A stretch of DNA of 64,000 nucleotides, taken from Phaeosaccion multiseriatum. Lineage: Eukaryota; Protista; Ochrophyta, other classes. The notes under the pieces were generated by a model. The model had not been told where the DNA came from, did not search any database, and saw only the letters and a list, made by a program, of their open reading frames with translations. The stretch is from positions 2,604,001 through 2,668,000 of the forward strand of contig OZ218954.1 of assembly GCA_965112735.1 (NCBI GenBank), written 5' to 3'. Below, in pieces: positions 2,121 through 61,477 of this stretch (position 1 is its first letter; each line of letters begins with the position of its first letter). A program made the position numbers and the translations under genes.

Positions 2121-2330
2121 ACCTGCTACCTGCTACCTGCTACCGGCGGCGTCAGCGGGCCTACTACCTGCTACCGCCGCATCAACCGGCTTCGACCTGC
2201 TACCGGCCGGCGTCATCGCGTCAGTCGGCCTGCTCGGCCGGCTCCTGACATGCTTTCCTCTTTGGGGGGGTTGCTTCTGCATCAGCCGGCCTGCTGCCTG
2301 TCAGCCGGCCCGCAAGTAGCATGCTACCGA
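2121..2330. repeat. Degenerate array of (CTACCTG)n plus GCCGGCGTCAGCCGGC-like core; member of the dispersed GCCGGC family
   Basis: About three units such as acctgctacctgctacctgctaccggcggcgtcagcgggc, plus tcagccggcc at about 2282 and 2301 and the palindrome gtagcatgctac. Confidence 0.7.
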
Positions 2331-2776
2331 AAATAAGGAGGTAGCACGTCAGGGATCGATCACCTGCCCGAGGTTTCGGCCTCTCAGACACTCGTCTCCA
2401 GTCACCAGAAGAAAGGGGAGAAGAGCATACAGAAGAGCTACTGCAGCAGTAAAGCATATGTGCAGGACATGCATGTAATGGAATGGAACGCTTGCTTCAA
2501 CCCCCCCCCCCTCCCCCACGCCTCCTTCATTCGCTGGCGACCTTTCCTTTCATTTATAATTCTATTTATTCTTGCAGCTGCTGCTGGCTCCTAATGGCCT
2601 GACGTTGCAAGTCATTCGCGACTGACACTGGGTCGGACAGACGCGAGAGCTTGAAATATGGTCCATATCCCCTACATTTAGGGACGAGTGGCGACGCTAT
2701 CTCCGCAGCGTGTAAAGAAGGAAAGTGAACCACTTGGAAGGATAAACAACGCCGGAATATCTCTTCTTCTTCTAGG

Positions 2777-3928
2777 CTACACCATGTTGACTACGGCAGG
2801 CAGCTGCATCATCTCTCCCGTGCGCAGACTGACAATGTAGTAGTAAAAGAAGTCTCCCATGATAGCGATGTGCACAAACTGTGTCAGCAGCACGAAGGGC
2901 CCCACCATGGAGCTATTGGTTGCGCCTGTGGTGCGGTTTAGGGGTTGGGGGAGGGGGTGGATGTTAGGGGGGGTGAACAGACTGATTTTCCACCTCTCTG
3001 CGCCAAGAGAAGGGGAAGGCTCTTCTTACCTGAGAGTTCATGGTACGAGTAGGCCCAGAAGATCATGTCCAATACCCTGGAGAAGCCCAGGGCAAAGACG
3101 CTGTGCCCAATGAGCACCTCCACCACACCCTTGGCCTGCTTCTGGAACATGTACAGCTGGGGGACAATGGCACAGGACTCCAGGTACATGGACAGCGCCC
3201 ATGCCGTGTCGGTCACAAATTCGCGGTTCAGAGAAGGGTGCAAGATCAAGGCGAGGAGGAAGCACGGCACCACGAGCCACAAAATGCCGAGGTGGTGAGG
3301 AACATGAAGGACACCAAAGTTGTCGTAGTCTCGCTGGTAGGACCGAGCGTATTTCGTCTCAATGAGCAGTAGACAACTGAGGGCCAGCCCCAAGGATAGC
3401 CCCTCAGCAATGTGGTACACAAAATCGCCACTCTTGTCATATGGGAGGTAGCCCTCGTGCCGAAGAATCGAAGCGAGACGGAACATAAACACCAGCGAAT
3501 ACATTTGGAGCGTCTTCTTGCTCACGCCCTTGGCGTGCTTCTTCACAAACATCCTCACAAAGAGGACACTGAAGCCAAATGTCCGCGTAAAGGCAGCGAA
3601 GGTCATGAGGAAGGAAAAATCTCCGTCGCTGCAAAGCGTAAAGATGCTGCCCACAACGAGGAAGAACACGGCCCACAGCCCAATCGTCTTGTTCATCTTG
3701 CGGACCATCTCCAGCGTCCTGCAAGGCAAGAAAGCAGAATGGAGGAGGGCCGGGTCAAGTTAGACTTCCAGGACATAGGGGGGGCTATGTAGGTGAGTTT
3801 CGCAGGTGCTTGGCCGTTCAAGGAGCGTGTTCGCTACGTGCTCTTTGGCCTCGCCAGGAACACAACACCACTTACGGCCGTGGGGACGCCAAGTAGCGGG
3901 GGGACGTATTGGCGCTTGGGGAATTCAT
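2777..3928 (-). CDS. ERD2: ER lumen protein-retaining (KDEL) receptor family protein, 3 exons
   Basis: Motifs GVSKKTLQMYSLVFMFRL, SMYLESCAIVPQL and MGDFFYYY; multiple TM segments; GT-AG introns at about 3875-3720 and 3029-2926 restore the frame. Confidence 0.9.
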
Positions 3929-4300
3929 GATGCCCGTATCGCCAAGCACCGCGGGATTGTGGTTTGTGCGAGCAAAGCCCGGCTGTGCCCCCCCCGCTGG
4001 AAGTTTCAGTGCGAGTTTCAGTGCTACAACTGGCGTCGTTCCGTCGTGAAATCGTGTGAAACGATAAAACGATTTTTTTTATTTTTTTCTCTTTCTTTTC
4101 CCCTTTTCCTACAGTTGTACTGTACTAAAGAGAAAAAGAGAATCGTAAGTCGGAGGAAAATAGAGAAACGGGTTAAAGTTAGTTGGATGATAGTTACAGG
4201 GGTGTTGAGGCCACTGCCATCGCTCTCCGACCTCTTTTCCACAGAATGGTGTCTCGTGAAGCCAGCCTGATCGTCCTTGGCGGCGCTTCCAATGGGCGCA

Positions 4301-5479
4301 TCACGTTGCGTCTGCTGTTTGAAATTGCTGAAGGACTTGGCTGGCTCTGACATTGGTGGAAGACTGGACTACGCTAAAGAGGGACGTTTCGTCGGCCAAG
4401 GCTGCCTCCCCTCTCCAAGGCAAGTCTTGGGCAAACCACACGTTGTGCCCCATCAACGTGACCTCGTGCTGCGGCTCGTGAAGATGCTTGAACATTCGAA
4501 AGTGCCGCAGCGCTGAACGGTAGAGCGTATACTCACTCCACCAAAGCTGCTGCTGCTCCGGCTGCTGTTGCTGTCCCCAATTCGTAAGGAGCCACTCCAT
4601 GGCATTCTCTCCGTGCACCTCCCGTAACCTGGCCAGGACCAAGAAAGCCCCACACTGGCTGAGCACGGCCGGGGTCACACCGAACCCTCCTAATGTGCCC
4701 TGCGGCGCCATGCCCAAGACAGCCTCAGACGAAGCCCACCACGCCGAGTGCACTTCTCTGCTCTCGTCCACGAAAGTAGCCTTGTTTTCAGAGCTCAAGA
4801 AGTCAGATGTGGTCAGGTTCATCTTGGTGCAAACCACGTCTGCATCCAGGGTGACGTAGAACTCTGTTCGCACGACAGTCGATACGAGCAGTTTCAAAGC
4901 CATCTGCACTGCGTACCCTTCCCACACCAAAGAGGAAGTGTCGTCTTCGTGACGCCTTTGCTGCACGGGCAGCAGGGTTCTTTCTCGGACCACTCGGACT
5001 GGGAGTCGTTGTGTCTTGCAATCGCCTTCTTCACTGTGGAACAGCAGAAGCTGCTCAAAAACAGGAGCCTGTGCGTCAGGCACCACAACAATGAGCTCTT
5101 CGAATACGGCATTCTGTCCACCATTAGCGAAGCCTTCGCCTCGGGCAGACAGTGCGCGCTCCAGCGAATAGAGGAGAACAGCGGCGCGGTCCAAATCGTC
5201 CAACACCAACGTCAGCACTGCCGTCAGTTTCTGCACTGGTCGCACAGGAGCCGGTTCGAGCGCAGTAACCACGACTGGGATCGGTGCGCTGGAAGCCGTG
5301 ATGGTACCTCGTCCCTCGACGTCATCCGCGTCCATCAAGTGCGCCGTAAGCCATGCCTGCCCAACCTCCGCGATGGGAACGTAGACGGAAGATTGCTCGT
5401 CTGCCGAGAAGCATCCCGCAAGAGTCCCATTGACCCGTGCGCACACTCTGATCGGCAGCAGCAGCATAACGTAACCCAT
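4301..5479 (-). CDS. Putative GT-A fold nucleotide-diphospho-sugar transferase (DUF6492-like); long single exon, start uncertain
   Basis: 398-aa ORF with 'GYAVQMALKL...EFYVTLDADVV' (DxD motif), TPAVLS and WSEYTLY; hydrophobic N-terminus. Confidence 0.65.
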   Translation of the reverse strand: MGYVMLLLPIRVCARVNGTLAGCFSADEQSSVYVPIAEVGQAWLTAHLMDADDVEGRGTITASSAPIPVVVTALEPAPVRPVQKLTAVLTLVLDDLDRAAVLLYSLERALSARGEGFANGGQNAVFEELIVVVPDAQAPVFEQLLLFHSEEGDCKTQRLPVRVVRERTLLPVQQRRHEDDTSSLVWEGYAVQMALKLLVSTVVRTEFYVTLDADVVCTKMNLTTSDFLSSENKATFVDESREVHSAWWASSEAVLGMAPQGTLGGFGVTPAVLSQCGAFLVLARLREVHGENAMEWLLTNWGQQQQPEQQQLWWSEYTLYRSALRHFRMFKHLHEPQHEVTLMGHNVWFAQDLPWRGEAALADETSLFSVVQSSTNVRASQVLQQFQTADAT

Positions 5480-5839
5480 CGGTGGTAGCAGCAGCAAGAG
5501 CAGCAGCAGCAGTAGGAGTTTGTATCAACGGAGGGGGAGACAGGGGCAACACTTCTTTCACCCGTGGCCCTCTCTCACCTCTCACCTCTCTTCGCGTTTT
5601 GCACCGCCACTGTGAATGGCACAAGAGCACGAACTTCGGCAGCGTCATGGCCAAACACTTGCCAGGGTAACGGACTAATCACATTCACGGACAAGACATT
5701 CATCCCTACTTGAGCCCATCACAGGAGGGACGCACAACCGCTGTGTTGGGAGGCTAAACCCTTCTTATGGCAATGGCCCTGACCTAAACATTTTCTCCCC
5801 TCTCCTTTCCTGCTCTTCCTCTATCTCACTCTCTCTACG

Positions 5840-5886
<47 letters not shown>

Positions 5887-5929
5887 CTCTCTCAGGCCCT
5901 GGGTGATCGGCCCTGTGGGCAAAAGCAAG

Positions 5930-6499
5930 ATGCCGGGCACGTCCTCTGCTGATTCGACCTGCACGAACGAGTACTGCAATTATGGGTGGGGTGAGATCCT
6001 GACCCATTTGGATCCGTACGGATGGGCCAATATGGGGATAGGTTTTGCGCTTGGATTGTCCATTGTTGGCGCTGCTTGGGGCATTTTCCTGACGGGCAGC
6101 AGTATTGTCGGGGCGGCGGTGAAGGCGCCTCGTATCCGGAGTAAGAACCTGGTGAGCGTCATTTTTTGCGAGGCGACTGCAATTTACGGAGTCATCATGG
6201 CCATCATTCTTCTCAACAAGATCCAGGAGCCGAGCGATGACATGTCCAACTACGACTGGAGTCAAGCGTACTTTGCTGCTTATGCGCTCTTTATGGGCGG
6301 TTTAGGGGTGGGCCTCACAAATCTGGCCAGCGGTATTTCCGTGGGTGTGGCAGGGAGCAGCTGTGCTTTGGCAGACGGACAGGATGGGTCACTGTTCGTC
6401 AAGATTCTCATTGTGGAAATCTTTGCCTCTGCCTTGGGAATTTTTGGCATCATTGTGGGCATCATTCAGAGTAACTCGGCGCAGTTTCCGGAGGCGTAA
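5930..6499 (+). CDS. ATP6V0B: V-type ATPase 21 kDa proteolipid subunit c''
   Basis: GAAWGIFLTGSSIVGAAVKAPRIRSKNLVSVIFCEATAIYG and LFVKILIVEIFASALGIFG are hallmark VMA16/ATP6V0B motifs. Confidence 0.97.
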   Translation: MPGTSSADSTCTNEYCNYGWGEILTHLDPYGWANMGIGFALGLSIVGAAWGIFLTGSSIVGAAVKAPRIRSKNLVSVIFCEATAIYGVIMAIILLNKIQEPSDDMSNYDWSQAYFAAYALFMGGLGVGLTNLASGISVGVAGSSCALADGQDGSLFVKILIVEIFASALGIFGIIVGIIQSNSAQFPEA

Positions 6500-6542
6500 A
6501 AAGCTCTCTTTCCTTCCTCTGTACAGTACATTACTAACAGCT

Positions 6543-8600
6543 CTATTGCAGAGTAGCAGCGGCATGGGAGGCTTTGGGTGCCGCGGGGGACATGAGATAG
6601 TCCGAGTATTTGAATCGCAGGTGAGCCCACAGCAATGCGAATACACCAGCCACTCCGGACACGACCACGCCTCCGGTGGTCCGATGTTGTGATGGCGCAA
6701 AGGTTATCCAGCCTGTCAGTCCCATCACCACTAGAAAGAAGGTGACGCCCCATCGGAAGTAGGAAAAGGACTTGTGCCACTCCGAGTCACCCCTGACGCG
6801 GTGTTGATTCCGAACCTCGTCCTCCCGATGGGACTTGTACAAGAGAATGTTGCCAAAGGTGGCCGTCAACATGGCAATCAGCGAGCAACCAACCTGAGTA
6901 GAGAGAGCGCAAGAAGAACCAGTACGTAAGAGGCAGGAGGGCAAACCACGTGCAAGCGTGCCAGCTTGGAACATCGCCACAAGAGCGTACCGTCAAAGAC
7001 GTGGCCAGCCCGTAAAGAATGACAATGGAAAGCTCCAGATCCTTGGGGATTTGCACCTCCACCATGGCCACCATAGCAAATCCGGCTATGAGGGCAGATA
7101 GGCTCGACACTTGCTGAAACTCCGCGCCCCGAACATCGACTTTTCGTCTTTCGTTGTCCTGTCTCCTCCACTGCATCTGCACCTCCATGTGAGAAGCCTC
7201 TTTCTGCATGGCGACTTCCTCCTTTTCAAACAGCTGCAGCTCCCGCTGGCGCCATGCCATGTCCTCTAGGCGGCATTTTTGGTTCCACGTCAGCTCAGAG
7301 ACCTATGAAAGAGCAAAGAGCAAAGAGAGACGGGGGGGAGGAGTAGAAGGATGAAGAAGAGGAGGAGAGTTGTAGGAAGAGGAGGAGGAGGGGGGGTAGG
7401 AGAAAGGGGAGGAGGACGAGGAGCAGCAGCAGCAGGAGGAGGAGGAAGAAGGATTGGAAGTGGTCCATTGAAAGAGGAGGAAGAGGAGGAGGAGGAGGAG
7501 GAGGAGGAGGAGGAGGAGGAGGAGGAGGGAGAGGAGGAGGAGGAGGAGGGATTGGAAGTGGTGGAGGAGGAGGAGAAGGAGGAGGAGGAGGAGGAGGAAG
7601 AGGAGGAGAAGGAGGAAGAGGAGGAGGAGAAGCGGGAGGAGCATTGGGGGTGGGGGACTGGAGGAGGAGGAGGAGGAGGCTAAGGAAGAGGAGGAGGAGG
7701 AGGAGGAGGAGGAGGAGGAGCAGAAGGAGGAGGAGGAGGAGGAGGAGGAGGAGGAGAAGGAGGAGAAGCAGGAGAAGCAGGAGGAGGAGGAGGAGGAGGA
7801 GGAGGAGGAGGAGGAGGAAGGTGAGGGGGAGGAAGAGGGTAAAGAGGAGGAGGAGGGAGGAAGGGGAGGAGGAGGAGGGAGGAAGGGGAGGAGGAGGAGG
7901 AGGAGGAGGAGGAGGAGGAGGAGGAGGGGGAGAGAAGGAGGATTGATAGTGGGGGATTGGAGGATTGGGTGTGGGGGATTGAAGGAGGGGGAGGAGGGGT
8001 AGGAGGAGCAGAGGAGGATTGGTAGTGGGTGGTTGGAGGATATGGTGTGTGTGGGATTGAAGAAGAAGAAGAAGAAGAAGAAGAAGAAGAAGAAGGAGGA
8101 GGAGGAGGAGGAGGAGGAGGAGGAGGAGGAGGAGGAGGAGGAGGAGGAGGAGGAGGAGGAGGAGGAGGAGGAGGAGGAGGAGGAGGAGGAGGAGGAGGAG
8201 GAGGAGGAGGAGGAGGAGGAGGAGGAGGAGGAGGAGGAGGAGGAGGAGGAGGAGGAGGAGGAGGAGGAGGAGGAGGAGGAGGAGGAGGAGGAGGAGGAGG
8301 AGGAGGAGGAGGAGGAGGAGGAGGAGGAGGAGGAGGAGGAGGAGGAGGAGGAGGAGGAGGAGGAGGAGGAGGAGGAGGAGGAGGAGGAGGAGGAGGAGGA
8401 GGAGGAGGAGGAGGAGGAGGAGGAGGAGGAGGAGGAGGAGGAGGAGGAGGAGGAGAAGAAGAAGAAGAAGAAGAAGGAGAAGGACACAGCAACAGAGGAT
8501 AAAAAGGAGGTGGGGACTTCCTTTGTAACACTCGATAGTAGTGGGGAAGTGAAGGGCGGCTTACCTGAGTGCCTGTCCCAATGGCGCTCAAGAACTCCAT
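6543..8600 (-). CDS. ORAI: Orai-family (CRAC) calcium channel, 3 exons (8600-8565, 7302-6991, 6893-6543)
   Basis: TM1 SALIAGFAMVAMVEVQ is nearly identical to Orai1 SALLSGFAMVAMVEVQ (E106 filter); four TM segments; phase-0 GT-AG introns join the exons in frame. Confidence 0.9.
7330..8480 (+). repeat. Polypurine tract: degenerate (GGA)n, then perfect (GGA)120 at 8095-8454 flanked by (GAA)n; fills Orai intron 1
   Basis: Directly visible simple repeat between the predicted donor (8564) and acceptor (7303). Confidence 0.97.
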
Positions 8601-8816
8601 ACCTGCCGACGCAGTTTAAAGCCTTCGCGCGCGTGCTTGGCTACTTTGATCGAAGCATAGTTTATTGAGGTGATGGGGAAAAGGGGTAGAGCTACCACAT
8701 CATCTAGCCCCCCCTTCCGCTGCTCGTTCGCTATGGTGGCCCGGCCGCCCTCTTTTCTCACTGACATATTGTATTTCCAACACTGGGCTTGCTCCCTGCA
8801 CAGACGCTCGCTCCCG

Positions 8817-16029: not shown

Positions 16030-16536
16030 CACCATAGAGAGAAAGAGAGAGAGCGACACATACACAGAGAGAGAGCGACACACAGAGATAGGGAGAGAGA
16101 TGGAGACAAGAGACAGAGACAGGGAGCGACGGAGAGGCAAAGAGAGAGAGAGTGAGAGAGACAAAGCAGAAAAAGGAGGGAGAGTGAGAGAGACAAGGCA
16201 GAGAGAGAGCAGAGACAGATAGAGACAGAGAGGGGAGAGCGAGGGAGAAAAAGAAAGAAAAAGAGACGGAGAGAGAGACAGAGGGATAGAGAGAGAGCGA
16301 TACACAGCGAGAGAAGAGAGGGATAGCGACATACACAGAGGGAGATACAGAGAGAGAGGAGAAGAGAAGGGGGGCGGAGGGGAAGAGACAGAAAGAGATA
16401 GACAGGCAGAGAGGGGAGAGGGAGAAAGCAAAAGAGAGAAGAGACAGAGAAGGGAGGGGAGAGAGAAAGAGAGAGAGCACAGATAGAGAGAGCTAGACAG
16501 AGAGAGAGGGATAGAGAGAGAGAGCGAGAGAGAGCG

Positions 16537-16586
<50 letters not shown>

Positions 16587-16755
16587 CGACACACAGAGAG
16601 AGGAGGGAAGGAGAGCGACAGAGGGGAGAAAGAGAGAGAGATGGAGAGAGAGCCACACATCCACCAACCCTCCACACACACATCCGCCTCCTCACTCAAC
16701 CCCCCTCCCCACCCACCCATCCAGCCACACGCACACACACACACACACACACACC
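16030..16755 (+). repeat. Degenerate (GA)n and (CA)n microsatellite tract, probably inside a 5'-UTR intron of SPT4
   Basis: Purine-rich GA/GACA repeats; minus-strand donor GTGAGT near 16766. Confidence 0.85.
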
Positions 16756-18256: not shown

Positions 18257-18588
18257 AGAGACATTTTACTGAAAGGGGCGAGGGGGGTGAGGCAGCAAAG
18301 ACGGCGCAACATATGGGGCTCTACGGCCAAAAGGGCGAAGTCTTACAACCTTGTCGACAGACTTAGAACGAACGACGACGTAGAGAGTGGGCATTGGGGA
18401 TGTTGGGAAGGCCTAAAAAAAGATTGTCCTTCATGGCATGACACATGACGTTAGGGCGCTTGTCTCTGTAGTGCGAAAGCTTGAAAGCTTGGTCAGCAAC
18501 GGGTTCTACCCCAATTAATGCGCGTGAGTCTTACTACTTGTCTAAGCAGCTGAGTCGCTTTTACACCCTGGACAGGATTAGACGCTTA

Positions 18589-18624
18589 TGATTATGGCCG
18601 GCGCCAGCTGATCAGCCGGCCGGC
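18589..18624. repeat. Solo unit of the GCCGGC-core family
   Basis: tgattatggccggcgccagc (18589-18608) is identical to 61350-61369. Confidence 0.8.
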
Positions 18625-19104
18625 TTTCAGCTTCCGACCGCTGCACCAAAGCTACTTTGTCCTGCCCGTGTGGGGGGTCAGACCGCCAGCCTGGCGACGT
18701 AGGGAGGAGCATCACCGGGCTCTCTCCTCCTCCTCCTCCTCCTCCTCCTCCTCCTCCTCCTCCACTGGTACGCCTGCTGGCACACGGCACTCGCGCTTTT
18801 TCCTCCAGACACAATCCCTCTCTCTCTCTCTCTCGCCCTGCTCACTCTTCTTCTCTCCCCACTTGCTGGTGTACAGCTCTCCCCTTGCTCTCTCGCCCCC
18901 CCACGCTCTTCCCCTTCGTTTCCTCTCCCGCGCTTCTCCTTCAACACTTCGACACTCGGAGTCGATGAGGGCTACATTATGTAAGGGTTGAAGCGGGACA
19001 AAGAAGCCCAGAAATCAAGAGAACATATAGAAAGCTTTATAGAAATCTTGTGCGCTTGCTGCCGAGTCGCCTACCGTCAAGGCTAACACCTACTGCCTAA
19101 ATCT

Positions 19105-23375: not shown

Positions 23376-23472
23376 TTCAACCCCTGATACACTATCGTCC
23401 ACATTCTTGATAGCGGATAGCGCGCCGGCTGGCGCCGGCAATAGCGGATAGGATAGTGTATCAGGGGTTGAA
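23376..23472. mobile_element. 97-bp MITE-like hairpin element with 21-bp perfect terminal inverted repeats (copy 1)
   Basis: TTCAACCCCTGATACACTATC (23376-23396) / GATAGTGTATCAGGGGTTGAA (23452-23472); homologous copy at 54560-54680; no clear TSD. Confidence 0.75.
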
Positions 23473-23614: not shown

Positions 23615-24537
23615 AGTGAGTGCATGTGGAGGAAGGGAGGGTGGATATGCGTCGACCGGCTAGACCCCCTTGTCTTTGAGCTTTCTCCCGATTACAGCAG
23701 CCGAAAGATGATGTGAAGAGCGAGAGCCAAAGCCCCCCCCCCCCTCACTTGCTCCTCAGTCCTGCTGTGGCTCGCTTTATGCCCCCCCCCCTCCCCTCCT
23801 CTTTTCTCAATCCTTGGCACCGCTTTGTCTCGCTCTGCTCTTGGCTCCTACAGTGAAGCAGAACCCGAATGTGGCGTCCTCCCGGCGCAAGAGCCGGAAG
23901 GCTCACTTCGGTGCGCACTCCACTCAGCGCAGGCTCTTGATGTCCGCTCCTCTCTCCAAGGAGTTGCAAGCCAAGTACAACGTAAGTATGGACTGATCCT
24001 GCAGCGGGTGGGGTGTGGTCGGCACTGTGTAACTCAGGTCGGGACGCGCGACGTGGACACTCCAAAAGAGAGAAGAGAGGTTATGTATCTATTATTCACG
24101 TTCTCCACTGTGCCTTCCTGCTGCTGCTATGCTCGGTCAGGTTCGGTCATTGCCTGTGAGGCAGGGTGATGAGGTCATGGTTGTGCGTGGGTTCTTCAAG
24201 ACTCGCGAGGGCAAAGTCAACGAGTGCTACAGGAAGAAGATGGTGCTTCACATCGAGAGACTGACGAGGGAAAAGGCCAATGGTAAGACGGCTCAAGTGG
24301 AGAAGCGCCACCGCTATGATATGTCGTCTCCCCAGAATGGCACAAACCCTCAACTCTTTACTCGTCGTGCTGTTGTCAGGTGCCACGGTGAACGTTGGTG
24401 TCCACCCCTCCAAGTGCGTGATTACCAAAATCAAGCTTGATAAGGACCGCAAGGAGCTCTTGGAGCGAAAGGACAGGAGCACGGGGGGCAGCAAAGCCAG
24501 CGGTGAACAGGACGTGAACATGGCGGGCGTGGACTAA
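23615..24537 (+). CDS. RPL26: 60S ribosomal protein L26 (uL24), 4 exons; start codon predicted to be split A|TG by intron 23616-23853
   Basis: [32 protein letters not shown]|[35 protein letters not shown]. Confidence 0.97.
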
Positions 24538-30610: not shown

Positions 30611-31990
30611 ATGTTTATCCTTCTCTACCTACTGCTGGCTGTCTTCCCTCTGTATTTTGTTGTCTCCCTTCCGGAAGACGCGGGGCTCCGTTCGATGCTG
30701 GCATCAGTGGATGCGGTGTACGTGCTCAACTTGGACAGAAGCCCCGACCGTCTGGCCCGTATCGGGCAGCAGCTGTCAAGGCTAGGGGTGGCTTCTTTTC
30801 GGCGCGTGCGGGCAGTGGACGGCTCGCTTCTGTCGTCCACTCCCAACCCCACGGCAGGCGTGCTGACCTACCACTTCGGCGGGCTCTCCATTCGGACGTG
30901 GGACGTCGAGGAGCTCGAGGGCTTGGAAGCCGATGAGGGGCCCCATGCAGAGAGAGTGGCCATCACCATGTCTCACTTAAAGGCTGTATGCCAGGCCTAT
31001 CGTCATAATCATAATCGAGTAATAGTGCTCGAGGATGACGTGAGTTTGGCGGGAGGCAGTGAAGCAATGGGCGCGGGTGATGTGCAGGCCGTCCTGGATG
31101 CCCTGCCCGAGGGGTGGGAGGTTCTTCAGCTGTCGACAAACATCGCCTCTCCAGCTGTAGCGCAGCAGCTTGGTGGTTTGTGGAAGACAGGGCACTTGGC
31201 CATGAAGAGGGACCCTTGTGGATCTCACTGGGTGCAGTGGGGTGCGTATGCCTACATTGTAAGCAGGGAGGGTATGCGCACCCTTTTGCAAAGATACTGG
31301 CCGGAAGCCCTCTCCGTCGGGCCCGAATTTGTGTGCGACGAGCAACACGACGAGCAAGGCGGGGAGGCCACTGCCATTGGTTTGAGGGGCTCATTCGACT
31401 TGACGGCGACGTCCAACTTCTTTGCAGATTATCTGCTCTACCGCCTGCCGAATGTGTATGTCATGACACGTCCTGCCATCTTACCGCCGCGAGATTTTAG
31501 TCCAACACACGAGCAGAAGGGAAGGACAGTAAGGCTGGTGGACAGAGCTCGTGCTCTGCACTTGAGCACCTTTACTGAAGCAGAGCAGCAGCAGCAGCAG
31601 CGGCAGCAGTGCTCCTCCATCGTATTCTCCGGGGAACGTGGTTGCAAGCGCCACTTTATTGGGAGCTCGCCGACACCCTACATATTCCGTGGAAACGATG
31701 CTTGCGAAACGGTGCTTGGGGGGGAATATACTCGCAACTCCGCCAAGTGTGCCTTCCTCACGGCCAGCTTGTGGGACTTTTCAAGACTCTGTGAGGTGCA
31801 GGGGGGGCAGGAGGACGAGGCATGCGATACTTGCATGGTGCTGTCTGGCTTTTACCAGCTAGTTGAGGTGTGTGAGAGTACGGGTGGCGCGGCCCAATAC
31901 TGCCGAGACACTATTGGACATCAGGACGGCGCATGCGCTCGATTACAAGAAATGTGGCCAGGTTTCATTTCGTTACGGGTCGATGAGTAA
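30611..31990 (+). CDS. Glycosyltransferase family 25-like protein with N-terminal membrane anchor and Cys-rich C-terminus; intronless
   Basis: VYVLNLDRSPDR, RVRAVDG, SHLKA, IVLEDD and AYAYIVSREG are GT25 signature motifs. Confidence 0.85.
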   Translation: MFILLYLLLAVFPLYFVVSLPEDAGLRSMLASVDAVYVLNLDRSPDRLARIGQQLSRLGVASFRRVRAVDGSLLSSTPNPTAGVLTYHFGGLSIRTWDVEELEGLEADEGPHAERVAITMSHLKAVCQAYRHNHNRVIVLEDDVSLAGGSEAMGAGDVQAVLDALPEGWEVLQLSTNIASPAVAQQLGGLWKTGHLAMKRDPCGSHWVQWGAYAYIVSREGMRTLLQRYWPEALSVGPEFVCDEQHDEQGGEATAIGLRGSFDLTATSNFFADYLLYRLPNVYVMTRPAILPPRDFSPTHEQKGRTVRLVDRARALHLSTFTEAEQQQQQRQQCSSIVFSGERGCKRHFIGSSPTPYIFRGNDACETVLGGEYTRNSAKCAFLTASLWDFSRLCEVQGGQEDEACDTCMVLSGFYQLVEVCESTGGAAQYCRDTIGHQDGACARLQEMWPGFISLRVDE

Positions 31991-38162: not shown

Positions 38163-40624
38163 ATGACTTGCCCCACCGTCCGGTTCGGACGAACTGAGCT
38201 GAATATTCCAGTTATTACCGTGGGTTAGTTGCAAAGCCAGAAGAGAGAAGGGAGGGGGGGAGGATGTGGAAGGGGAGGGGAGAAGAGATGGTGGAGAAGA
38301 CCTCACGTCCCTGTTCTCGTCTTTGGTCCTGTTTGCTGACTAGGTGGGATGAGGCAGCAGCAAACCTGGCGAGTGCCCGAGGGCATGACTCTCGAAGATG
38401 TGAAGGATGAGGTGAAGGAAAACTTTCAGGGGATAGTTGATCGAGCGATGGAGATCGGAATGAACCACTTTGAGACAGCGTCTGGTTACGGCAGCAGTGA
38501 GATGCAGTTTGGAGAAGCCTTGAAGAAGTACCCGCGGGAATCTTTCATCCTCCAGGTCTGGAACGTCATGCAAGGCCCGCCCGCCACATTAAGAGCACTT
38601 ACCACCTCCCTCCCTCTCGTCGTTGTTGTGCAGACAAAAGTCGCGGCCAAACAAGATGCGCAAGAGTTCAGGACGTACGTTGTCTTTGCTTCCCGCGCCA
38701 CGCCTCATCAACCTCACTGCCCCCTCCCCCCCTTTTCCACCTTTGGCTCTAGGCTTCTGGAACAGTCGTTTTCCAGGCTGCAGACAAGCTACCTGGATTT
38801 GTTTGCGTTCCATGGCATCAACAAACCTGAGATGGTAAGACCGGGGGGAGGGAGGGTTCGCGTTGTCTTTCTTTTCGTTGGCCGTCCCACACCCCTCCAC
38901 AGATTTCCTTCGCTCATACTCTCTCCGCCTGTCCGTCACTCTGGCACAGCTGGATTGGATTCTGAAGGAGGGGGGCTGCCTTGAAGTGGTGGAGGAATAT
39001 CGATCCGCGGGAAAGATCCGGCACGTGGGCTTCTCCACCCACGCGTACACAGAGCTCATTGTGTCGTGCATAGAAACTGGAAAGTTCGATTACGGTGCGT
39101 TCACGTGGTGCTGCGTCTTGTTGCCTTGCCTTGCCCTCACGCACGCACTCCTTGTTCGTTTCCTTCACCTTGTTCTTCAGTCAACCTCCACTACCACCAA
39201 ATTGGGAGCTACACTGCCTCTGGGACGGACCAGAACGGGACTGACGAGCGGCACAGCGGGTAGTGTTGATGCTGAGATTGCTTGACTAGCCCCTCCGCCC
39301 CCCCGGCACCTCTTGTTTAAGCCCTTTCTCTCTCGCCCATGTTTCTCGTTCAGTAATCTCTCGGCTGTTGAGGCAGCCTCTAAGCAAGACATGGGGGTGT
39401 TTATCATCAGGTAAGTTGGAAGCGCGGAGGATTGGCATGCTTCAGGCTCTGTCTAAGAGGCGCTTTCTCCACAGCCCCAATGATAAAGGAGGAATGCTCT
39501 ACAAGCCCCCAAACAAGTTAGTTGAGGCGACGGCTCCGGAAGGGGTGAGCCCCATGGCGTTTAACATGCTTTGGCTGCTGAGCCACGATCCCCCGATCCA
39601 TACGCTCTCCGTGGGAGCAGCGCGACCGACAGATCTAGACGAGCCGCTGCAGACGGTAGGGCGCTTGGAGGGGGCGAGCGAAATAGTGGGGCCTATTGAG
39701 AAGAGGCTACGAGCCATGATGGTGGATGCCAATGGGGAAGAGTGGCTCCGCACCTGGTGGAAGGGCTTGCCTGGGGTTTTTGAGAATCCCAGTGGGGTGT
39801 TTGTCCCTCACATCGTGTGGCTGCACACATTGCTAAGAGGGTACGGGATGTTCGACTTCTGCAAGGCCCGTTATGCGACCCTCTTAGGTGAGTGACTGAC
39901 TCCGACTGACTGACGGACTGACGGACTGGCTGACTGGCTGACTGACTGGCTCACTCACTCACTCACTCACTCACTCACTCACTCACTCACTCACTCACTC
40001 ACTCACTCACTCACTCACTCACTCACTCACTCACTCACTTACGCACTCACTCACTCACTCACTCACTAACTCACTCGCCAACTCACTCACTCACTTACTC
40101 TCACTCGCTCACTCACTTCGCTAACTCACCGACTGACTGACTCACTAAGTCACTCACTTCGCTCACTCACTCACTCACTCACTCACTGATTGACAGACAG
40201 ACTGACCCACTCACTCAATCACTCACTCACTCACTCCGCTCACTCATCGACTCACTCCACTCAGTTACTCCCTCACCCAATCGCTCACTCACTCACCCCA
40301 CGCACTCACTCCCTCACCCACTCGCTCACTTACTCATTCTCATACGCACTCACCCACTCTCTCACTTGCTCACTGACTCACCGACCGACCGACTGACTGA
40401 CTCACTGACTCACTGACTCACTAATTCACTGACTCCACCCACTCAATGACTCACTCACCACTCCCTCCCTCCCTCACTCACTCACTCAGTCACTCACTCA
40501 CTCACTCAGTCACTCTCACTCACTCACTCACTCACTCAAGCACTCACTCCACTCACTCACTCCCACATCCACTTGCTCACTCTCTCAGCTCACTCACTCT
40601 CTCAGCTCACCCTCTTGCTCACTC

Positions 40625-40655
<31 letters not shown>

Positions 40656-41012
40656 GACTGGACAGGGAACGTGAAGCAATGGAAGGCAACAGAGTCGAGG
40701 GAGGAGAGGCTCGCGGCATGGAGCTATACACCCGGACTGCCCTTTCTGGACGAGGACGGCGTCAGGGCAGCCGTGTCCACAGAACTGGATGCTTGCCCAC
40801 ACAAGGAAAAGGTGCTCTCTATTTTGAGCGAAATGCACGATTTGCTCGCGGGGGAGGAGAAGGAGGAGAGGCCAGAGGAGTGGAAGGTAAGTCAACTTCT
40901 CATCCTTGCTGGAGACACGCTACTAACCATTTTGCAAATCTGTGTCACGTCTTTTCAGCCGGCGTACGATATGCAACCCTGGATTCCGTTCCCCGAGCGC
41001 CCAGCGGTCTAA
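38163..41012 (+). CDS. Aldo/keto reductase (bacterial/cyanobacterial-type), multi-exon
   Basis: RFGRTELNIPVITVGGMR, NHFETASGYG, QTK, YLDLFAFHG, GKIRHVGFSTH, ISPNDKGG. Confidence 0.9.
39893..40660 (+). repeat. (ACTC)n/(ACTG)n tetranucleotide tract filling an intron of the aldo/keto reductase gene
   Basis: Visible repeat between donor GTGAGT near 39888 and acceptor CAG near 40665. Confidence 0.95.
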
Positions 41013-47579: not shown

Positions 47580-47586
47580 CAAATTC

Positions 47587-52683: not shown

Positions 52684-52858
52684 ACTAGGGTCACATGAGT
52701 GAGAGATTTGAGTGTTGTCAGCAGCGCACATGGGCCATTGACATGTGTAAGCAATACCTGAGCAAGATGCAGGCCGTGGTTCATGATCGTTTACGACTGA
52801 AAATACGGATAACTTAGTCGAGTGAGGCCAGCTGCTATTGCCTGTCTGTGACCCTAGT
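52684..52858. other. 175-bp segment bounded by 12-bp perfect inverted repeats (MITE or structured RNA candidate)
   Basis: ACTAGGGTCACA (52684-52695) / TGTGACCCTAGT (52847-52858). Confidence 0.45.
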
Positions 52859-52888
52859 TCTTGTGTGTGAGTGATATGAGCCAACCCA

Positions 52889-54236
52889 GGGAGGGAGGGA
52901 GGGAGGGAGGGAGGGAGGGAGGGAGGGAGGGAGGGAGGGAGGGAGGGAGGGAGGGAGGGAGGGAGGGAGGGAGGGAGGGAGGGAGGGAGGGAGGGAGGGA
53001 GGGAGGGAGGGAGGGAGGGAGGGAGGGAGGGAGGGAGGGAGGGAGGGAGGGAGGGAGGGAGGGAGGGAGGGAGGGAGGGAGGGAGGGAGGGAGGGAGGGA
53101 GGGAGGGAGGGAGGGAGGGAGGGAGGGAGGGAGGGAGGGAGGGAGGGAGGGAGGGAGGGAGGGAGGGAGGGAGGGAGGGAGGGAGGGAGGGAGGGAGGGA
53201 GGGAGGGAGGGAGGGAGGGAGGGAGGGAGGGAGGGAGGGAGGGAGGGAGGGAGGGAGGGAGGGAGGGAGGGAGGGAGGGAGGGAGGGAGGGAGGGAGGGA
53301 GGGAGGGAGGGAGGGAGGGAGGGAGGGAGGGAGGGAGGGAGGGAGGGAGGGAGGGAGGGAGGGAGGGAGGGAGGGAGGGAGGGAGGGAGGGAGGGAGGGA
53401 GGGAGGGAGGGAGGGAGGGAGGGAGGGAGGGAGGGAGGGAGGGAGGGAGGGAGGGAGGGAGGGAGGGAGGGAGGGAGGGAGGGAGGGAGGGAGGGAGGGA
53501 GGGAGGGAGGGAGGGAGGGAGGGAGGGAGGGAGGGAGGGAGGGAGGGAGGGAGGGAGGGAGGGAGGGAGGGAGGGAGGGAGGGAGGGAGGGAGGGAGGGA
53601 GGGAGGGAGGGAGGGAGGGAGGGAGGGAGGGAGGGAGGGAGGGAGGGAGGGAGGGAGGGAGGGAGGGAGGGAGGGAGGGAGGGAGGGAGGGAGGGAGGGA
53701 GGGAGGGAGGGAGGGAGGGAGGGAGGGAGGGAGGGAGGGAGGGAGGGAGGGAGGGAGGGAGGGAGGGAGGGAGGGAGGGAGGGAGGGAGGGAGGGAGGGA
53801 GGGAGGGAGGGAGGGAGGGAGGGAGGGAGGGAGGGAGGGAGGGAGGGAGGGAGGGAGGGAGGGAGGGAGGGAGGGAGGGAGGGAGGGAGGGAGGGAGGGA
53901 GGGAGGGAGGGAGGGAGGGAGGGAGGGAGGGAGGGAGGGAGGGAGGGAGGGAGGGAGGGAGGGAGGGAGGGAGGGAGGGAGGGAGGGAGGGAGGGAGGGA
54001 GGGAGGGAGGGAGGGAGGGAGGGAGGGAGGGAGGGAGGGAGGGAGGGAGGGAGGGAGGGAGGGAGGGAGGGAGGGAGGGAGGGAGGGAGGGAGGGAGGGA
54101 GGGAGGGAGGGAGGGAGGGAGGGAGGGAGGGAGGGAGGGAGGGAGGGAGGGAGGGAGGGAGGGAGGGAGGGAGGGAGGGAGGGAGGGAGGGAGGGAGGGA
54201 GGGAGGGAGGGAGGGAGGGAGGGAGGGAGGGAGGGA
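52889..54236 (+). repeat. Perfect (GGGA)n tract, 1348 bp (337 units)
   Basis: Directly visible; no interruptions seen. Confidence 0.98.
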
Positions 54237-54559
54237 CGCAGACATAGCTAAGCATTTCCATTTAGTTTTTAAAGTCTTGCCGTCAAAGCTCTTCGAGCCT
54301 AAGACGCAAAGGCGTTTCGTCGACACGAATGCCCATATGCCTGTCAATAGTAGGCTGCCCCCATCCTGCTGAGGTGGGGGGGCAACGGCCGGTACGGGGG
54401 GAGGGGCAATAGCGGATAGCTAGTCGGCCCGCGCCCGGCGATAGCTTACAGCGTGTCGGCTGACGCGGCGAGCTCAACAACCCAGAGAGAGATATAGTCC
54501 AGAGAGAGGTGGGGGGGCGAGTAAGTCAATGATTTCTTCCCATCCCTCCTCTCTCCTCC

Positions 54560-54680
54560 TTCAACCCCTGATGCACTATCGCCCACATTCTCGATAGCTA
54601 TCCGATAGCGGATAGCGGATCGGCTGGCGCCGGCGCCAGCCGGCACGCTGCGCCACGCGGATAGTGCATCAGGGGTTGAA
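54560..54680. mobile_element. 121-bp MITE-like hairpin element with 21-bp perfect TIRs (copy 2)
   Basis: TTCAACCCCTGATGCACTATC / GATAGTGCATCAGGGGTTGAA; interior homologous to 23376-23472 and containing the palindrome cggctggcgccggcgccagccg. Confidence 0.75.
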
Positions 54681-55925: not shown

Positions 55926-55944
55926 CGTGTGTATAAAGAGCTCA

Positions 55945-56763: not shown

Positions 56764-57005
56764 CGCCTCTTCTTTGTAGTTACCCCCCAAGCTGTGGAAT
56801 AGTCCTCAAGGAGACGCCCCCCCCTCTATAGCTCGCTCGGAATCAATCGACTTTACAAATGAGTGTTGTGCCGATGCTTTTAAGTGACTCTTTTGTTCTT
56901 TTGGAAGAGAGGTTAATTTTCCCGAAGTAGGCTGGGTTGGGTTTCTTTTTTCCTTGGGATGCCCAAGAACGTTCAAATTCGCAGCACATATTAAATTGAG
57001 GGAAA

Positions 57006-58166
57006 ATGAAGTTCTTCCTCCTTCAAGCGGCCTTGTGCCTCTCCCTTGCTCAATGCTTCTCTCCCTCGCTTGCGCCTAAAGGCTGTGGGTTCAGTGCGCG
57101 AGGTCGAGGAGTTGCAGCCGCTCCAGCAGCAGTCGGGCTTGCTGCAGGTGCAGGCAATTTGGCGCGAGGATGGCCCACCTCCACAACGACTCTTAAGATG
57201 GCGGCAGAGAAGTTTGATACCATAGTCATCCCACCGGATTTCAAACTTGGTGCGGGATTCATTTTGGGGGGGGCTGCTGTCGCTGGAGGGCTGCACAACA
57301 CTGGGGTGGGCTTGCCTCTGCTCGTCATCGGCGCGTTCCTGACCCTTCAGGTGCAGTAGCCTTTCTGAACGTCCTGCGGTGCTGTACTTTGTGGAGTCAG
57401 GTGCACCAGTTGGGGCCCACGCGCTCCTTTCCTATCTGCAGTGGGGGCACAAAACGGGAAGGGAGGGAGTTTTCCATGATCCTGGGGCAAAACAGTGTAG
57501 TTTCCGCTGTTTGGGTTTCGGTTCGGGGTCGTGGCTGCTTACCGGTACCCTCATTGCTACAATTGCTACAGCACTAAGCTATCGCTTCGGGCGGGAAATA
57601 ACTCCCCAAGCTTCCCCGTGGGCCAACTCGCTCATTGCCCTTCCCTCGCAGGCAACCAGAGTGCGCTTCGAGTTTGATGATACGAGTATGGAGGTGAAGC
57701 TCGGGGGAGGAAACGCGGATGGAGAACTTCAAGACAGCGGGGAGAACTTTGCTGTGGGAGGCGCCAACCGCTGGCGGTATGACACATTCACCAAGTGGCG
57801 GGTGAGTAAGGTCTGGTGCCAACATTTTCCCGCGGAAAAGCCAGCTCACTGCGTGTCGATTGTCTCACTCTCATATATATGTTTAGGTGCTACCCTTCCG
57901 GGCTCTGCCCATTCTGGTCTACTTTTCAGAGGTACGATCTATATATATATATATGTATGTATAGCCGGGTCTTTGGAATACATTCAGCACGCACAACCTC
58001 CCCGAAAATAATGCCTCGCTCCTGCCTCTCTGCGTGCTCCCAACACAAACATGACCAGACGCAAACGGCTCCACAGGGCCAGCCTCACTTTTTCCCGTTC
58101 ATCATGGACCCAGGTCTCTTGATAAAGACACTGGAGGAGCGAGTGCCTAAAAGTGCCAGCGACTAG
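57006..58166 (+). CDS. Plastid-targeted DUF3119-family membrane protein, multi-exon
   Basis: Signal peptide ending AQC-FSP; FLTLQATRVRFEFDD, ENFAVGGANRW, PILVYF.ETQT, HFFP. Confidence 0.85.
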
Positions 58167-58275
58167 GTTCAAGACGGAAGGGGACAGGAGGGGAGAGTTC
58201 CCCACATTGTTAGATCATCTTAGGTATATAATCGCAGGCCTATTGAATTGTACAGCACCAACCCGCCTCGCAAGT

Positions 58276-58895
58276 CTATTGAATTGTACAGCACCCCCCG
58301 CCCCCCCCTTCCGCTCCTCTCGTCGTCCCCACTCGCTTGTCCACCGCACCCCCGTCGTCCTGGGAAGCCGAAGTACTTTGTGCGGGTCTCACGCTACAGT
58401 TGAATGGCGTAGGGCACGTCTTCAAGATGGGTATCTGATCAAGTGAAATGAATGTGTGTGTTCAACGCGATTCTGTGGTGGACTTTCCTCTTGATTCCAG
58501 GACTTACCTTTGCCTCCTCCAATGTCAGAGAGTCTTTCAAACACTCGGTGCCCATGCAAATGAGCCTCAGATGGGAGAGGTCCTGGGCTGGCGCAACACC
58601 TGAGGGACGCGGTGCAGCGAAAACAAGGCATAAGCAAGAAGTCGCTGGCGGTGGCTCGTCTTTGTTCCGCTTCTCCACCTCGTGGGTCTCACCTTCTGGC
58701 CAACTGGAGCAAAGCCTTTGCTTGAGCGCGCTGACTGTTTCACTTCTGTCTACATCATCGAATTCCAGAGTCACCCCTTCATAGTTCGCTGTATTTCATG
58801 GACACAGAGCGAGACAAAGGGGACATAAGATGGCTTCTTCTCCCGCTGGTTGCCCCTCCAGAGCGGACTTACCGAAAACAAACTTTACTTTCATC
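58276..58895 (-). CDS. UBL3: Membrane-anchored ubiquitin-fold protein (UBL3/MUB-like), 4 exons, C-terminal CCTIQ CAAX box
   Basis: MKVKFVF...TVSALKQRLCSSWP...LRLICMG..LKD; last exon reads ...GGGGGCCTIQ*. Confidence 0.82.
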
Positions 58896-59171
58896 GATTG
58901 GTGCCACAACTGCAGCTCCTGCTCTGGGCCCGAGCGAGCATCAGTAGCAGCACACTCCTTAGGAAGGGGGGGTGTTTTGCGGCGGTGGGTGGATCTCGAG
59001 GAAGGAGGCGCCCGCCCCGTCGTCGTCGCCAAAATTGATTACCAACTCGGCAATTTGTTACTTCATTTCTAGTCTTCGATTGTTCCCCGCGGGCCTGTTG
59101 CCCTGGGCCCGCTAGTTGCGCGCTGTCGGCTCTTACCGCGCTTCTCTGTCTCACGGGTGCTGACCCGAGAA

Positions 59172-61139
59172 ATGTTTTCCTCGCCGTATGGGTCAGGGAT
59201 TCCAGTGAACCCATACCAAGCTGCAGCAGCGGGAACAAGCAGCAACCATTTTAGCAGTGGCAGCTCTAGCAGGCGGAAGTGGCAAGGACGGATTGCTCTT
59301 TGCCTTGTCGTGTTCGCTGGTGTCCTTGTGCTTAAGCTGGGGGAGCAGTTTTTGTATAGGGACTTTCGCAGTGCTGGCGAACAAGAGTCCTTCGTAACGC
59401 CGAAGAATGGGGGGGGGGAACAACTCAAGCCAGCTTTTGGTGTGGTGGCGGATCTGCCCTCCATGCCACGCTCATCGGATGACGTGCATGTGATATTTTC
59501 CACCGACTGCTCGCCATATCAAGACTATCAGTCCACCTTGCTTTTCCACTCCGCCGAACTCGTGGGGCAGAGCGGCCCAGTCACACGCATCGCGAGTGGC
59601 TGCTCGGAGGAGGATGAGGCCGCGCTCAGAGAAAAGATGAGTGCAATGCCGGAGAATTTCCGGGTGCACTTTACACCTGACTTTAGCTCGGACCCGTTGA
59701 CTGGGGCAACGTACTACTTTTACAACAAGCCGAACGGCGTGGCCCACTTCTTGAGCAATGCGAGTCCCCCGGTCTCGGAAGCTGTGATTGCCCTCGTTGA
59801 CCCAGACCAAATCCTTCTCCGGAAGATCGAAGCTTCAGTTGGCAATGATATGGGCTGGTGAGTGCTTGTTGTTGTTCTCCTTGCAAGGAAAGTGAATAGC
59901 TGAGTCTCCAACCTTCGTTCTGACGTGAGTTCGCTTCCTCTCTCGCCTTTCGGCAGGAAATCGACCTACTCCGCCGAGTTCTTGACCTCGGCAGGCGACT
60001 GGGTGAGGGAGGGCTTTCCGACGGGGGCTCCGTACGGTCTCGGTGGTAAATGGACGACGTGGGCCGATTTGAGCAGCATCTTGGACGCCGTGCCGGAGAC
60101 TCGGGGGGGGGGCAGCCCAGCCCTGACCTACTCCATTCCAGAAGCGACACAGTTTTTCGCCGTGGGCCCTCCCTACCTGATGCATTCCAGGGACTGGGTC
60201 CGGCTGATCAAACTATGGGTGGCTCTTGCGCCGTACGTCAACCAGGGGCACCCAGGCATCTTGGCGGAGATGTACGGCTTTTGCGTCGCAGCGGTACGTA
60301 CAGCCAGGTTTGTCGTCTCTGGTCCCAAAGACGAAGACAGGCACAGTACTGATTGATTCCCGTCCACGCCGCCCTCCGCCACACCACAGGCACATTTGAG
60401 ACTGGAGCACCGCATCGGGGACACCTACATGATCAGCCAGCCCGGAGCGCCGGACGAGGGGTGGCGTCTCATTGAGCCCATGGGACGAGATGTTTGCCCT
60501 GTCGACATTGCGACGCAGTCGAAGCCAAATTTTCCAGTGGTCTTCCATTACTGCCAGGTATGTGGGCTTACTTCAATACACAGCTCTGGCCACCGGCAAG
60601 CAACAGAACTGAGCACAATATATTCTCCTCCTACTCGTACTCCCCCCCCCCCCCCGCCAAAACAGAGCTGGCGCGTAGCCGCGTTTTCCTTTTTGAAGCG
60701 GCACGAGAGTCTGCACGCTTTCTTCAGCTGCTCGGCCCCCGCCTGGGAGGAGCCGCCAAGTAACATCTTGGATCTTCCCATGGCCGCGGCACGGGTGCAC
60801 CCCAAGCACCGGGGGGGCGGGCCACTGGAGGTGGTGACCGACGAAGAGCGCAAGCTCCAGCAGGTGACTGAGATTATGCGTTTCCTCTCACCAGAGACTT
60901 AGCATGCACACCAACCAACTCTTTCCTCCCCCCCATCTCCTTCCTCCGAACAGGCGTTTGGCACGTGTCTAATGCTCAGGTACCTGAACAGCGCACAACG
61001 CGCCTATCAGGAGCGATTCTGTGGTGGCAACCGCCAGGCGGAGAACGGCTCAAAAAGATTCTCGGACCTGATTCCGAGCGATCTCGACGAGGAGCGGCTG
61101 ACTAGGCTGTACAAAGAAGCGGGGCTGTCGTACAGTTAA
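59172..61139 (+). CDS. Peptidyl-serine alpha-galactosyltransferase / hydroxyproline O-arabinosyltransferase-like type II membrane glycosyltransferase, multi-exon
   Basis: TM anchor; HVIFSTDCSPYQDYQ, VTRIASGC, YNKPNG, VDPDQ (DxD), GPPYLMH, LAEMYG, HYCQ. Confidence 0.85.
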
Positions 61140-61283
61140 AGCATCTCATACATGTACAGCGTCTTGTGTGATTCCCCCCCGTTGTTTTAGGATGCGGCGG
61201 CCGCTGACCACCCGGCCTAGAACTTTCACAATCCTCGTTTACTGTGCAGGCACCACCGCAGTCGGCCCTGGAAGAGGTTATCA

Positions 61284-61477
61284 GATTACTGATTACGGCC
61301 GGCGCAGCCGGCCTGATTACTGATTATGGCGCCAGCCGGGCCTGATTACTGATTATGGCCGGCGCCAGCCGGGTCTGATTACTGATTATGACCGGCGCCA
61401 GCCGGCCTGATTACTGATTATGACGGGCGCTAGCCGGCCTGATTACTGATTATTGGCGCCAGAGATTATGGTCGGCG
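61284..61477. repeat. Minisatellite of about 6 units of 29-33 bp (GATTACTGATTATGGCCGGCGCCAGCCGGCCT); GCCGGC-core family
   Basis: Units start at 61284, 61315, 61344, 61377, 61409 and 61441. Confidence 0.93.

What the first reader, a model, noticed from the sequence alone, without database searches (positions are those of the whole stretch)
2121..61477. Dispersed non-coding family (GCCGGCGYCAGCCGGC core plus variable 7-bp repeats) marks the head-to-tail gene junctions
Seen: the same ~16-bp GC core occurs at 2121-2330, 18589-18624, 23376-23472, 54405-54475, 54560-54680 and 61284-61477. It is usually next to a 7-bp tandem repeat that differs by locus. In core orientation these are CTGCTAC at 2.1 kb, CTGATTA at 61.3 kb and CCGCTAT at 23.4 and 54.6 kb. 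The family appears as tandem arrays, a solo unit, or inside TIRs. Four of the five head-to-tail junctions (TRMT2A/ERD2, OST48/RPL26, BUD20/RRP8, glycosyltransferase/channel) carry it. Among the 29 strand-switch junctions I see it only in the unusually long ClpP/RNA-binding-gene spacer. Inference: this could be a boundary, terminator or promoter-replacement element used where the alternating arrangement breaks. Alternatively it is a mobile element tolerated only there, or one that caused the rearrangements. I do not recognise it as a described element.
Basis: partly seen in the sequence, partly recalled or inferred. Interest (0 to 1): 0.85.

Follow-up and report, generated by a model that had tools for sequence, protein, structure and literature searches.

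The report
Mini-transposons fill head-to-tail gene seams
In this compact algal genome, where most neighbouring genes face in opposite directions, the repeat found at the few same-direction gene junctions is the inside of miniature DNA transposons that have settled between one gene's end and the next gene's promoter, most likely because insertions survive there and not because they form a new kind of boundary signal.

Summary
The core occurs 7 times (0.1 expected); 29 of 34 junctions switch strand; 4 of 5 head-to-tail junctions carry the family, against 1 of 29 others (Fisher p=5e-4; p about 0.002-0.014 after length control; one window, post hoc).

The core is not a free-standing element. Four of six copies lie inside 97-250-bp units with terminal inverted repeats starting TC(G/A)(A/G)CCC(C)TG. 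The 61.3-kb unit has a perfect 6-bp target duplication. The other two copies are decayed remnants. These are MITEs of three sister subfamilies; the 7-mers are subfamily-specific internal repeats.

Best reading: promoter-proximal insertion, then loss from shared divergent promoters and tight convergent 3' ends. The duplicated target shows one junction predates its element; one head-to-tail junction has none. An insulator role, or a role in rearrangement (three intact copies lack target duplications), is not excluded.

The scan noted the same pattern before on other pieces of this genome, and its notes led me to the termini; their P-like partner transposase is unchecked.

The parts
2112..2359 (.). 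E1: MITE, CTGCTAC subfamily, 248 bp, about 20-bp imperfect TIRs (TCGACCCTGA... / ...TCAGGGATCGA), no target duplication; between the ERD2 stop (2777) and the TRMT2A-like start (1615)
   Evidence: (IR 2116-2134/2336-2354, 89%)
18562..18624 (+). E2: decayed left-end remnant of the CTGATTA subfamily (CCCTGG terminus relic, one 7-mer pair, one core) in the 848-bp convergent ClpP/RNA-binding-like spacer
   Evidence: 20/20 match to E6; terminal part aligns to E6 left end; 15 of 1000 shuffles as good
23376..23472 (.). E3: MITE, CCGCTAT subfamily, 97 bp, perfect 21-bp TIR (TTCAACCCCTGATACACTATC), no target duplication; 100 bp after the OST48 stop, about 140 bp before the end of RPL26 exon 1
   Evidence: (hairpin z=-7.8)
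54405..54475 (+). E4: decayed internal remnant of the CCGCTAT subfamily, no TIR found
   Evidence: 81% over 37 nt to E3; no stable hairpin
54560..54680 (.). E5: MITE, CCGCTAT subfamily, 121 bp, perfect 21-bp TIR with the same A/G change in both arms relative to E3, no target duplication; 74 bp before the RRP8 start
   Evidence: (z=-8.4)
61262..61511 (.). E6: MITE, CTGATTA subfamily, 250 bp, TIRs starting TCGGCCCTGG, internal array of about six 32-bp (7-mer, 7-mer, core) units
61256..61261 (+). Left copy of the 6-bp target-site duplication CCGCAG of E6
   Evidence: chance about 0.003 after allowing 4 elements x 3 registers
61512..61517 (+). Right copy of the 6-bp target-site duplication CCGCAG of E6
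3929..4300 (.). Head-to-tail junction DUF6492 to ERD2 (both minus strand) with no element: the counter-example
52684..52858 (.). Unrelated candidate MITE (perfect 12-bp IR ACTAGGGTCACA) in the same BUD20/RRP8 head-to-tail spacer
   Evidence: single copy in the window, so a candidate only

Best explanation
The family is a set of non-autonomous cut-and-paste transposons (MITEs) in at least three sister subfamilies. They share a TC(G/A)(A/G)CCC(C)TG terminus and a GC core and differ in a 7-bp internal repeat (shown). The 7-mer plus core units are probably subterminal transposase-binding repeats (inferred by analogy). A transposase encoded elsewhere inserts them just upstream of promoters with a 6-bp duplication (duplication shown once; transposase and targeting inferred). 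In a genome where about 85% of junctions are shared divergent promoters (median 242 bp ATG to ATG) or tight convergent 3' ends (median about 180 bp), an insertion there harms two genes and is lost. At a head-to-tail seam it falls between one gene's 3' end and the next gene's promoter and survives (inferred). The elements therefore mark the junctions as colonists.
For: TIRs on E1, E3, E5, E6 and nine ends sharing a terminal word. Perfect 6-bp duplication at E6, so that junction existed as continuous DNA before the insertion. Three different subfamilies, 1-6 cores, either orientation, two decayed relics. One head-to-tail junction is empty. E3, E5 and E6 end 74-142 bp before the next gene's start, and in the 2.76-kb BUD20/RRP8 spacer both copies sit in the last 350 bp. 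That spacer also holds an unrelated IR element and a 1.35-kb microsatellite. Occupied: 4/5 unpaired promoters versus 0/15 divergent spacers (p=0.001). Precedents: P-element and Tf1 insert at promoters (PMC10018349, PMC7175516); divergent pairs in Ectocarpus share one nucleosome-depleted region and tandem spacers are longer (10.1101/2020.03.09.980763).
Against: No transposase is in the window, so mobility and targeting are inferred. E1, E3 and E5 have no target duplication, although E3 and E5 keep perfect TIRs. Free space alone does not explain the pattern: two occupied seams are only 231-241 bp without the element, while 15 other spacers of 200-460 bp are empty (p=0.02), so strong targeting or positive retention is needed. 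Only 5-6 events in one window.
Confidence: 0.65

Rival explanations
1. The elements are MITEs by origin but are kept by selection as insulators or terminator aids at head-to-tail seams. A host protein binding the core or 7-mer arrays, or the hairpin itself, would stop read-through into the downstream promoter or damp its upstream antisense transcription.
For: 80% occupancy of very small targets. The core is shared across subfamilies whose TIRs and 7-mers differ. E3 and E5 form strong hairpins. A boundary model predicts the same seam position.
Against: ERD2/DUF6492 works without one. E6 arrived after its junction existed. E2 and E4 are decaying. A shared core is expected from common descent or transposase binding. 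No expression data.
Confidence: 0.15
2. The transposons created many of the head-to-tail junctions. An inversion between a copy in a convergent spacer and a copy in a divergent spacer, or an aberrant transposition, leaves two same-direction junctions, each with a copy lacking its matching target duplication, as BuT5 and Galileo did at Drosophila inversion breakpoints.
For: Three of four TIR-complete copies lack a target duplication. Flipping ERD2 alone, or the 17-gene block between E3 and E5, would restore perfect alternation. Precedent: exchanged duplications at BuT5 breakpoints (PMC3698922).
Against: No pair of flanks is exchanged among E1, E3, E5 and E6. E3 and E5 lie in direct, not inverted, orientation. 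E6 has an intact duplication. The second ERD2 junction has no element.
Confidence: 0.13
3. There is no orientation effect: the elements sit in the longest spacers, or unannotated opposite-strand transcripts turn these junctions into strand switches.
For: Head-to-tail spacers hold 32-41% of intergenic DNA. The one exception lies in the longest convergent spacer.
Against: Four distinct head-to-tail junctions occupied: p=0.002-0.014 under every length weighting tried; length-matched p=0.02. OST48/RPL26 and glycosyltransferase/channel leave no room for a gene. No Pfam hit or clear coding signal in the spacers.
Confidence: 0.07

Closest known systems
MITEs (non-autonomous TIR DNA transposons), e.g. 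the P-element-associated MITE BuT5 (PMC3698922)
   Same: Short, non-coding, TIR-bounded, target duplication, conserved ends with variable interior, several related subfamilies.
   Different: 6-bp duplication rather than 8-9 bp; TCG/TCA termini; interior built from 7-mer plus GC-core arrays; partner transposase not seen in this window.
Drosophila P element (PMC3698922, PMC10018349)
   Same: TIR cut-and-paste anatomy; promoter-proximal insertion is the behaviour inferred here.
   Different: The P superfamily makes 7-8-bp duplications (BuT5 8-9); here 6 bp. No gene-orientation filter was reported in the passages read.
Schizosaccharomyces pombe Tf1/Tf2 insertions (PMC7175516, PMC5371812)
   Same: Safe-haven placement 100-400 bp upstream of Pol II genes in a compact genome.
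   Different: LTR retrotransposons; 93% of new insertions fall in tandem or divergent spacers, whereas here divergent spacers are empty (0/15).
Alternating gene order of Ectocarpus and other brown algae (10.1101/2020.03.09.980763; 10.1101/2024.02.19.579948)
   Same: Related lineage; short divergent spacers, longer tandem spacers.
   Different: About 60% alternation there versus 85% in this window; I found no report of a transposon family tied to tandem junctions (PMC12477816, section 7 and word searches).
Dada transposons (PMC3706591)
   Same: 6-bp target duplication; a Dada family is listed in Ectocarpus (PMC12477816).
   Different: Dada lack TIRs and target small-RNA genes; these have TIRs and no tRNA or Rfam gene is in the window.

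Membership tests
MITE | Short and without coding capacity | tested here: met
   97-250 bp; no Pfam hit or Rfam match
MITE | Terminal inverted repeats | tested here: met
   E3 and E5 21/21; E1 about 17/19; E6 15/16 plus 14/15. E2 and E4 are remnants.
MITE | Target-site duplication | tested here: inconclusive
   Perfect 6 bp at E6; absent at E1, E3, E5 in 4-9-bp registers
MITE | Dispersed multi-copy family | tested here: met
   Within the window only: CCGCTAT type x3, CTGATTA type x2, CTGCTAC type x1. Genome-wide counts could not be made.
MITE | Ends shared with an autonomous transposase-coding partner; empty sites | not testable with these tools
Only unchecked scan notes describe a partner.
P superfamily | 7-8-bp target duplication | tested here: not met
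   6 bp at E6 versus 7-8 bp in PMC3698922; not filed as P
P superfamily | P-type transposase | not testable with these tools
   No transposase in the window
Dada | No TIRs; inserted in small-RNA genes | tested here: not met
   TIRs present; no tRNA or Rfam gene
CACTA/EnSpm | CACTA...TAGTG termini with 3-bp duplication (own knowledge) | tested here: not met
   CACTA/TAGTG lies inside the E3/E5 TIR; its flanks are inverted (ATA/TAT, ATG/CAT), not direct
Chromatin boundary / terminator element | Blocks read-through or cross-regulation when present | not testable with these tools
   No RNA reads
Chromatin boundary / terminator element | Present wherever the function is needed | tested here: inconclusive
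   4 of 5 head-to-tail junctions; one lacks it
Host promoter element | Motif also found in ordinary promoters | tested here: not met
   GCCGGC and CAGCCGG occur in 0 of 15 divergent spacers; no PWM hit above 9 bits there

The most novel reading that the evidence does not exclude
In an algal genome with near-strict strand alternation, MITEs of an unclassified 6-bp-duplication lineage are not only tolerated at head-to-tail seams but tied to their existence: they are retained as insulating spacers, or some copies generated the junctions by transposase-driven rearrangement. Gene-orientation breaks would then be made or stabilised by a transposon family.
Probability: 0.25. Interest if true: 0.75.

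Novelty: new variant of a known kind. Interest (0 to 1): 0.45.

Why it matters
It turns a puzzling motif into a testable transposon-host arrangement. A genome with about 85% alternating genes separates three kinds of spacer cleanly, so it can show whether insertion targeting, purifying selection or co-option decides where transposons stay, and why compact genomes avoid head-to-tail neighbours. The MITE ends (TCG/TCA termini, 6-bp duplication, subfamily-specific 7-mer arrays around a shared core) fit none of the superfamilies tested here and may belong to an undescribed lineage. If the best reading holds, the mechanism is familiar (safe-haven colonisation) and the interest is moderate.

Tried and rejected
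Search for other copies: metagenome contigs twice (TIR 21-mer; 7-mer plus core) and viral contigs once, all blank. Core absent from 13 kb of Chrysoparadoxa. The organism's own protein is not in the protein collection (best 80% identity, brown-algal relatives), so the genome could not be walked and no orthologous locus compared; Chrysoparadoxa has a different neighbour next to the V-ATPase gene. A hidden plus-strand gene at 3930-4300 was considered from splice-like signals and dropped: DUF6492 runs to 4301 and the coding score is at background; a non-coding transcript is not excluded. A single inversion between E3 and E5 was rejected (same orientation, no exchanged flanks). CACTA, Dada and P membership were rejected on tested features. 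Longer ends for E3/E5 using the TCGA 8-10 bp beyond the right TIR gave no convincing duplication by eye. Paper searches for a transposon family confined to tandem junctions, or for a 6-bp-duplication TIR lineage in algae, found nothing matching; two papers were not held.
Full report
Setting. The window is from a gene-dense eukaryote (56% GC, introns about 90 nt). Its V-ATPase proteolipid is closest to brown algae, Chrysoparadoxa and Phaeothamnion at about 80% identity, so it is a stramenopile alga near the brown-algal clade. The species itself is not in the collections I could reach.

The motif is real. GCCGGCGYCAGCCGGC matches 7 times at up to 2 mismatches, against 0.10 expected. A PWM built from these sites gives eight hits above 17 bits, all in the listed loci. 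Outside them two hits exceed 12 bits, against 2.4 in shuffles, so no further copies hide in other spacers or introns.

A small HMM trained on the window, corrected by hand and checked exon by exon with Pfam (ERD2, OST48, RPL26, the BUD20-like zinc finger, RRP8, ion channel, DUF6492, Orai, RCC1, STN1, RING, NDUFA5), gives 35 genes. Several start codons are approximate. There are 15 divergent, 14 convergent and 5 head-to-tail junctions (alternation p=1.9e-5). Elements occupy 4/5, 1/14 and 0/15 (Fisher p=5.2e-4).

Length control. The sharper statistic, four distinct head-to-tail junctions occupied, gives p=0.002-0.014 under all weightings. Among spacers of 200-460 bp, 2/3 head-to-tail and 0/15 others are occupied (p=0.02). 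Orientation therefore matters beyond length, with the caveat of 5-6 events, one window and a post hoc test.

What the elements are. E3 (23376-23472) and E5 (54560-54680) have perfect 21-bp TIRs that differ by the same base in both arms. I had taken these two for MITEs before consulting earlier notes. E1 runs 2112-2359 between TCGACCCTGA and its near-complement. E6 runs 61262-61511 between TCGGCCCTGG ends and is flanked on both sides by CCGCAG (chance about 0.003). E2 (18562-18624) is a worn left end of the E6 type and E4 a worn interior of the E3 type. All ends share TC(G/A)(A/G)CCC(C)TG and then continue into subfamily-specific sequence; in E1, E3 and E5 this includes a version of the subfamily's 7-mer. 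The core and 7-mers are thus the interior of MITEs from three sister subfamilies. That they are transposase-binding repeats is an inference by analogy with P-element sub-TIRs (PMC3698922).

Why at head-to-tail seams. Four points favour colonisation. First, the E6 duplication shows that the glycosyltransferase 3' region and the channel promoter were already joined when it landed. Second, DUF6492/ERD2 is a 372-bp head-to-tail junction with no element. Third, subfamily, core number and orientation all vary, and two copies are decaying. Fourth, the BUD20/RRP8 spacer also holds an unrelated 12-bp-IR unit and (AGGG)337. Position suggests promoter-side targeting: E3, E5 and E6 end 74-142 bp before the next gene (E1 about 500 bp), with AT-rich DNA left on the promoter side of E3 and E5 (64%). 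Promoter targeting is known for P elements (PMC10018349) and Tf1 (PMC7175516). But 30 of 35 promoters here are in divergent pairs and none is occupied, so loss of such insertions is also required. In Ectocarpus, close divergent pairs share one nucleosome-depleted region (10.1101/2020.03.09.980763), which makes that loss plausible. An unchecked note (s1-362995) reports a large transposon inside a bidirectional promoter elsewhere in this genome, which would fit targeting of both promoter types.

What remains open. E1, E3 and E5 lack target duplications, and E3 and E5 have flawless TIRs, so point decay is an unlikely cause. Flanking deletion, arm homogenisation or exchange during rearrangement could each explain it. 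No flanks are exchanged within the window, and E3 and E5 are in direct orientation, so no inversion is shown. Occupancy of 80% at seams as small as 231-241 bp is high and leaves room for positive retention as an insulator. The core is absent from ordinary promoters, which argues against promoter replacement by mimicry. Spliced genes were searched exon by exon; the joined step was left out.

Comparison and novelty. It works like a MITE and meets the size, TIR and multi-copy tests; the duplication test is met once in four, and the partner is untested. It is not filed under P (6 bp versus 7-8 bp), Dada (has TIRs, no small-RNA target) or CACTA. I found no paper describing a transposon family confined to tandem junctions; that search covers open-access text only. 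The scan has noted the same junction pattern and the same termini on other pieces of this genome. These are AI notes and were used as leads only.

Verdict. Observation confirmed; interpretation partly supported. New variant of a known kind: MITEs of an unclassified 6-bp-duplication lineage with an orientation-filtered safe-haven distribution (confidence 0.65). Insulator co-option 0.15, rearrangement role 0.13, length or annotation effect 0.07. Interest 0.45.

Noticed in passing
window 52684-52858: A second, unrelated MITE-like unit with a perfect 12-bp inverted repeat (ACTAGGGTCACA), next to a perfect (AGGG)337 run at 52888-54236 that may be an expansion or an assembly artefact.
   Followed up: partly
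convergent spacers, e.g. 6520, 10755, 15114, 18870: The palindrome TGTACA is in 6 of 13 convergent spacers (0.87 expected): a candidate two-way 3'-end signal shared by convergent genes.
   Followed up: partly
window 23615 and 23854-23855: The RPL26 start codon appears to be split by an intron (A | TG).
   Followed up: no
window 7337-8484, 16036-16652, 39889-40659: Very long microsatellite-filled introns ((GGA)374 in the Orai-like gene, (AG)n in SPT4, (CTCA)n in the aldo-keto reductase) in a genome whose introns are otherwise about 90 nt.
   Followed up: no
window 31973-31990, 47580-47586, 55926-55944: Convergent genes whose coding ends overlap by 18 bp or lie 7-19 bp apart, so their 3' UTRs must overlap the partner's CDS.
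   Followed up: no
just beyond 23472 and 54680: Both E3 and E5 have an A-rich 8-10-bp stretch and then TCGA beyond the right TIR; either a target preference or a longer true end.
   Followed up: partly
window 18712-18946, minus strand: Possible extra last exon of the RNA-binding-like gene (HMM; no Pfam hit). If real, the 'unusually long' ClpP spacer shrinks to about 455 bp.
   Followed up: partly
window 23546, 46784, 54715: CCCCCTGG (either strand) lies in three promoter regions (3 of 4 window occurrences) and resembles the MITE terminus.
   Followed up: no
window 1348-1507 and 58232-58302: Local tandem duplications: 78 bp x2 inside the TRMT2A-like CDS, and 36 bp x2 in a convergent spacer that duplicates the TGTACA signal.
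   Followed up: no
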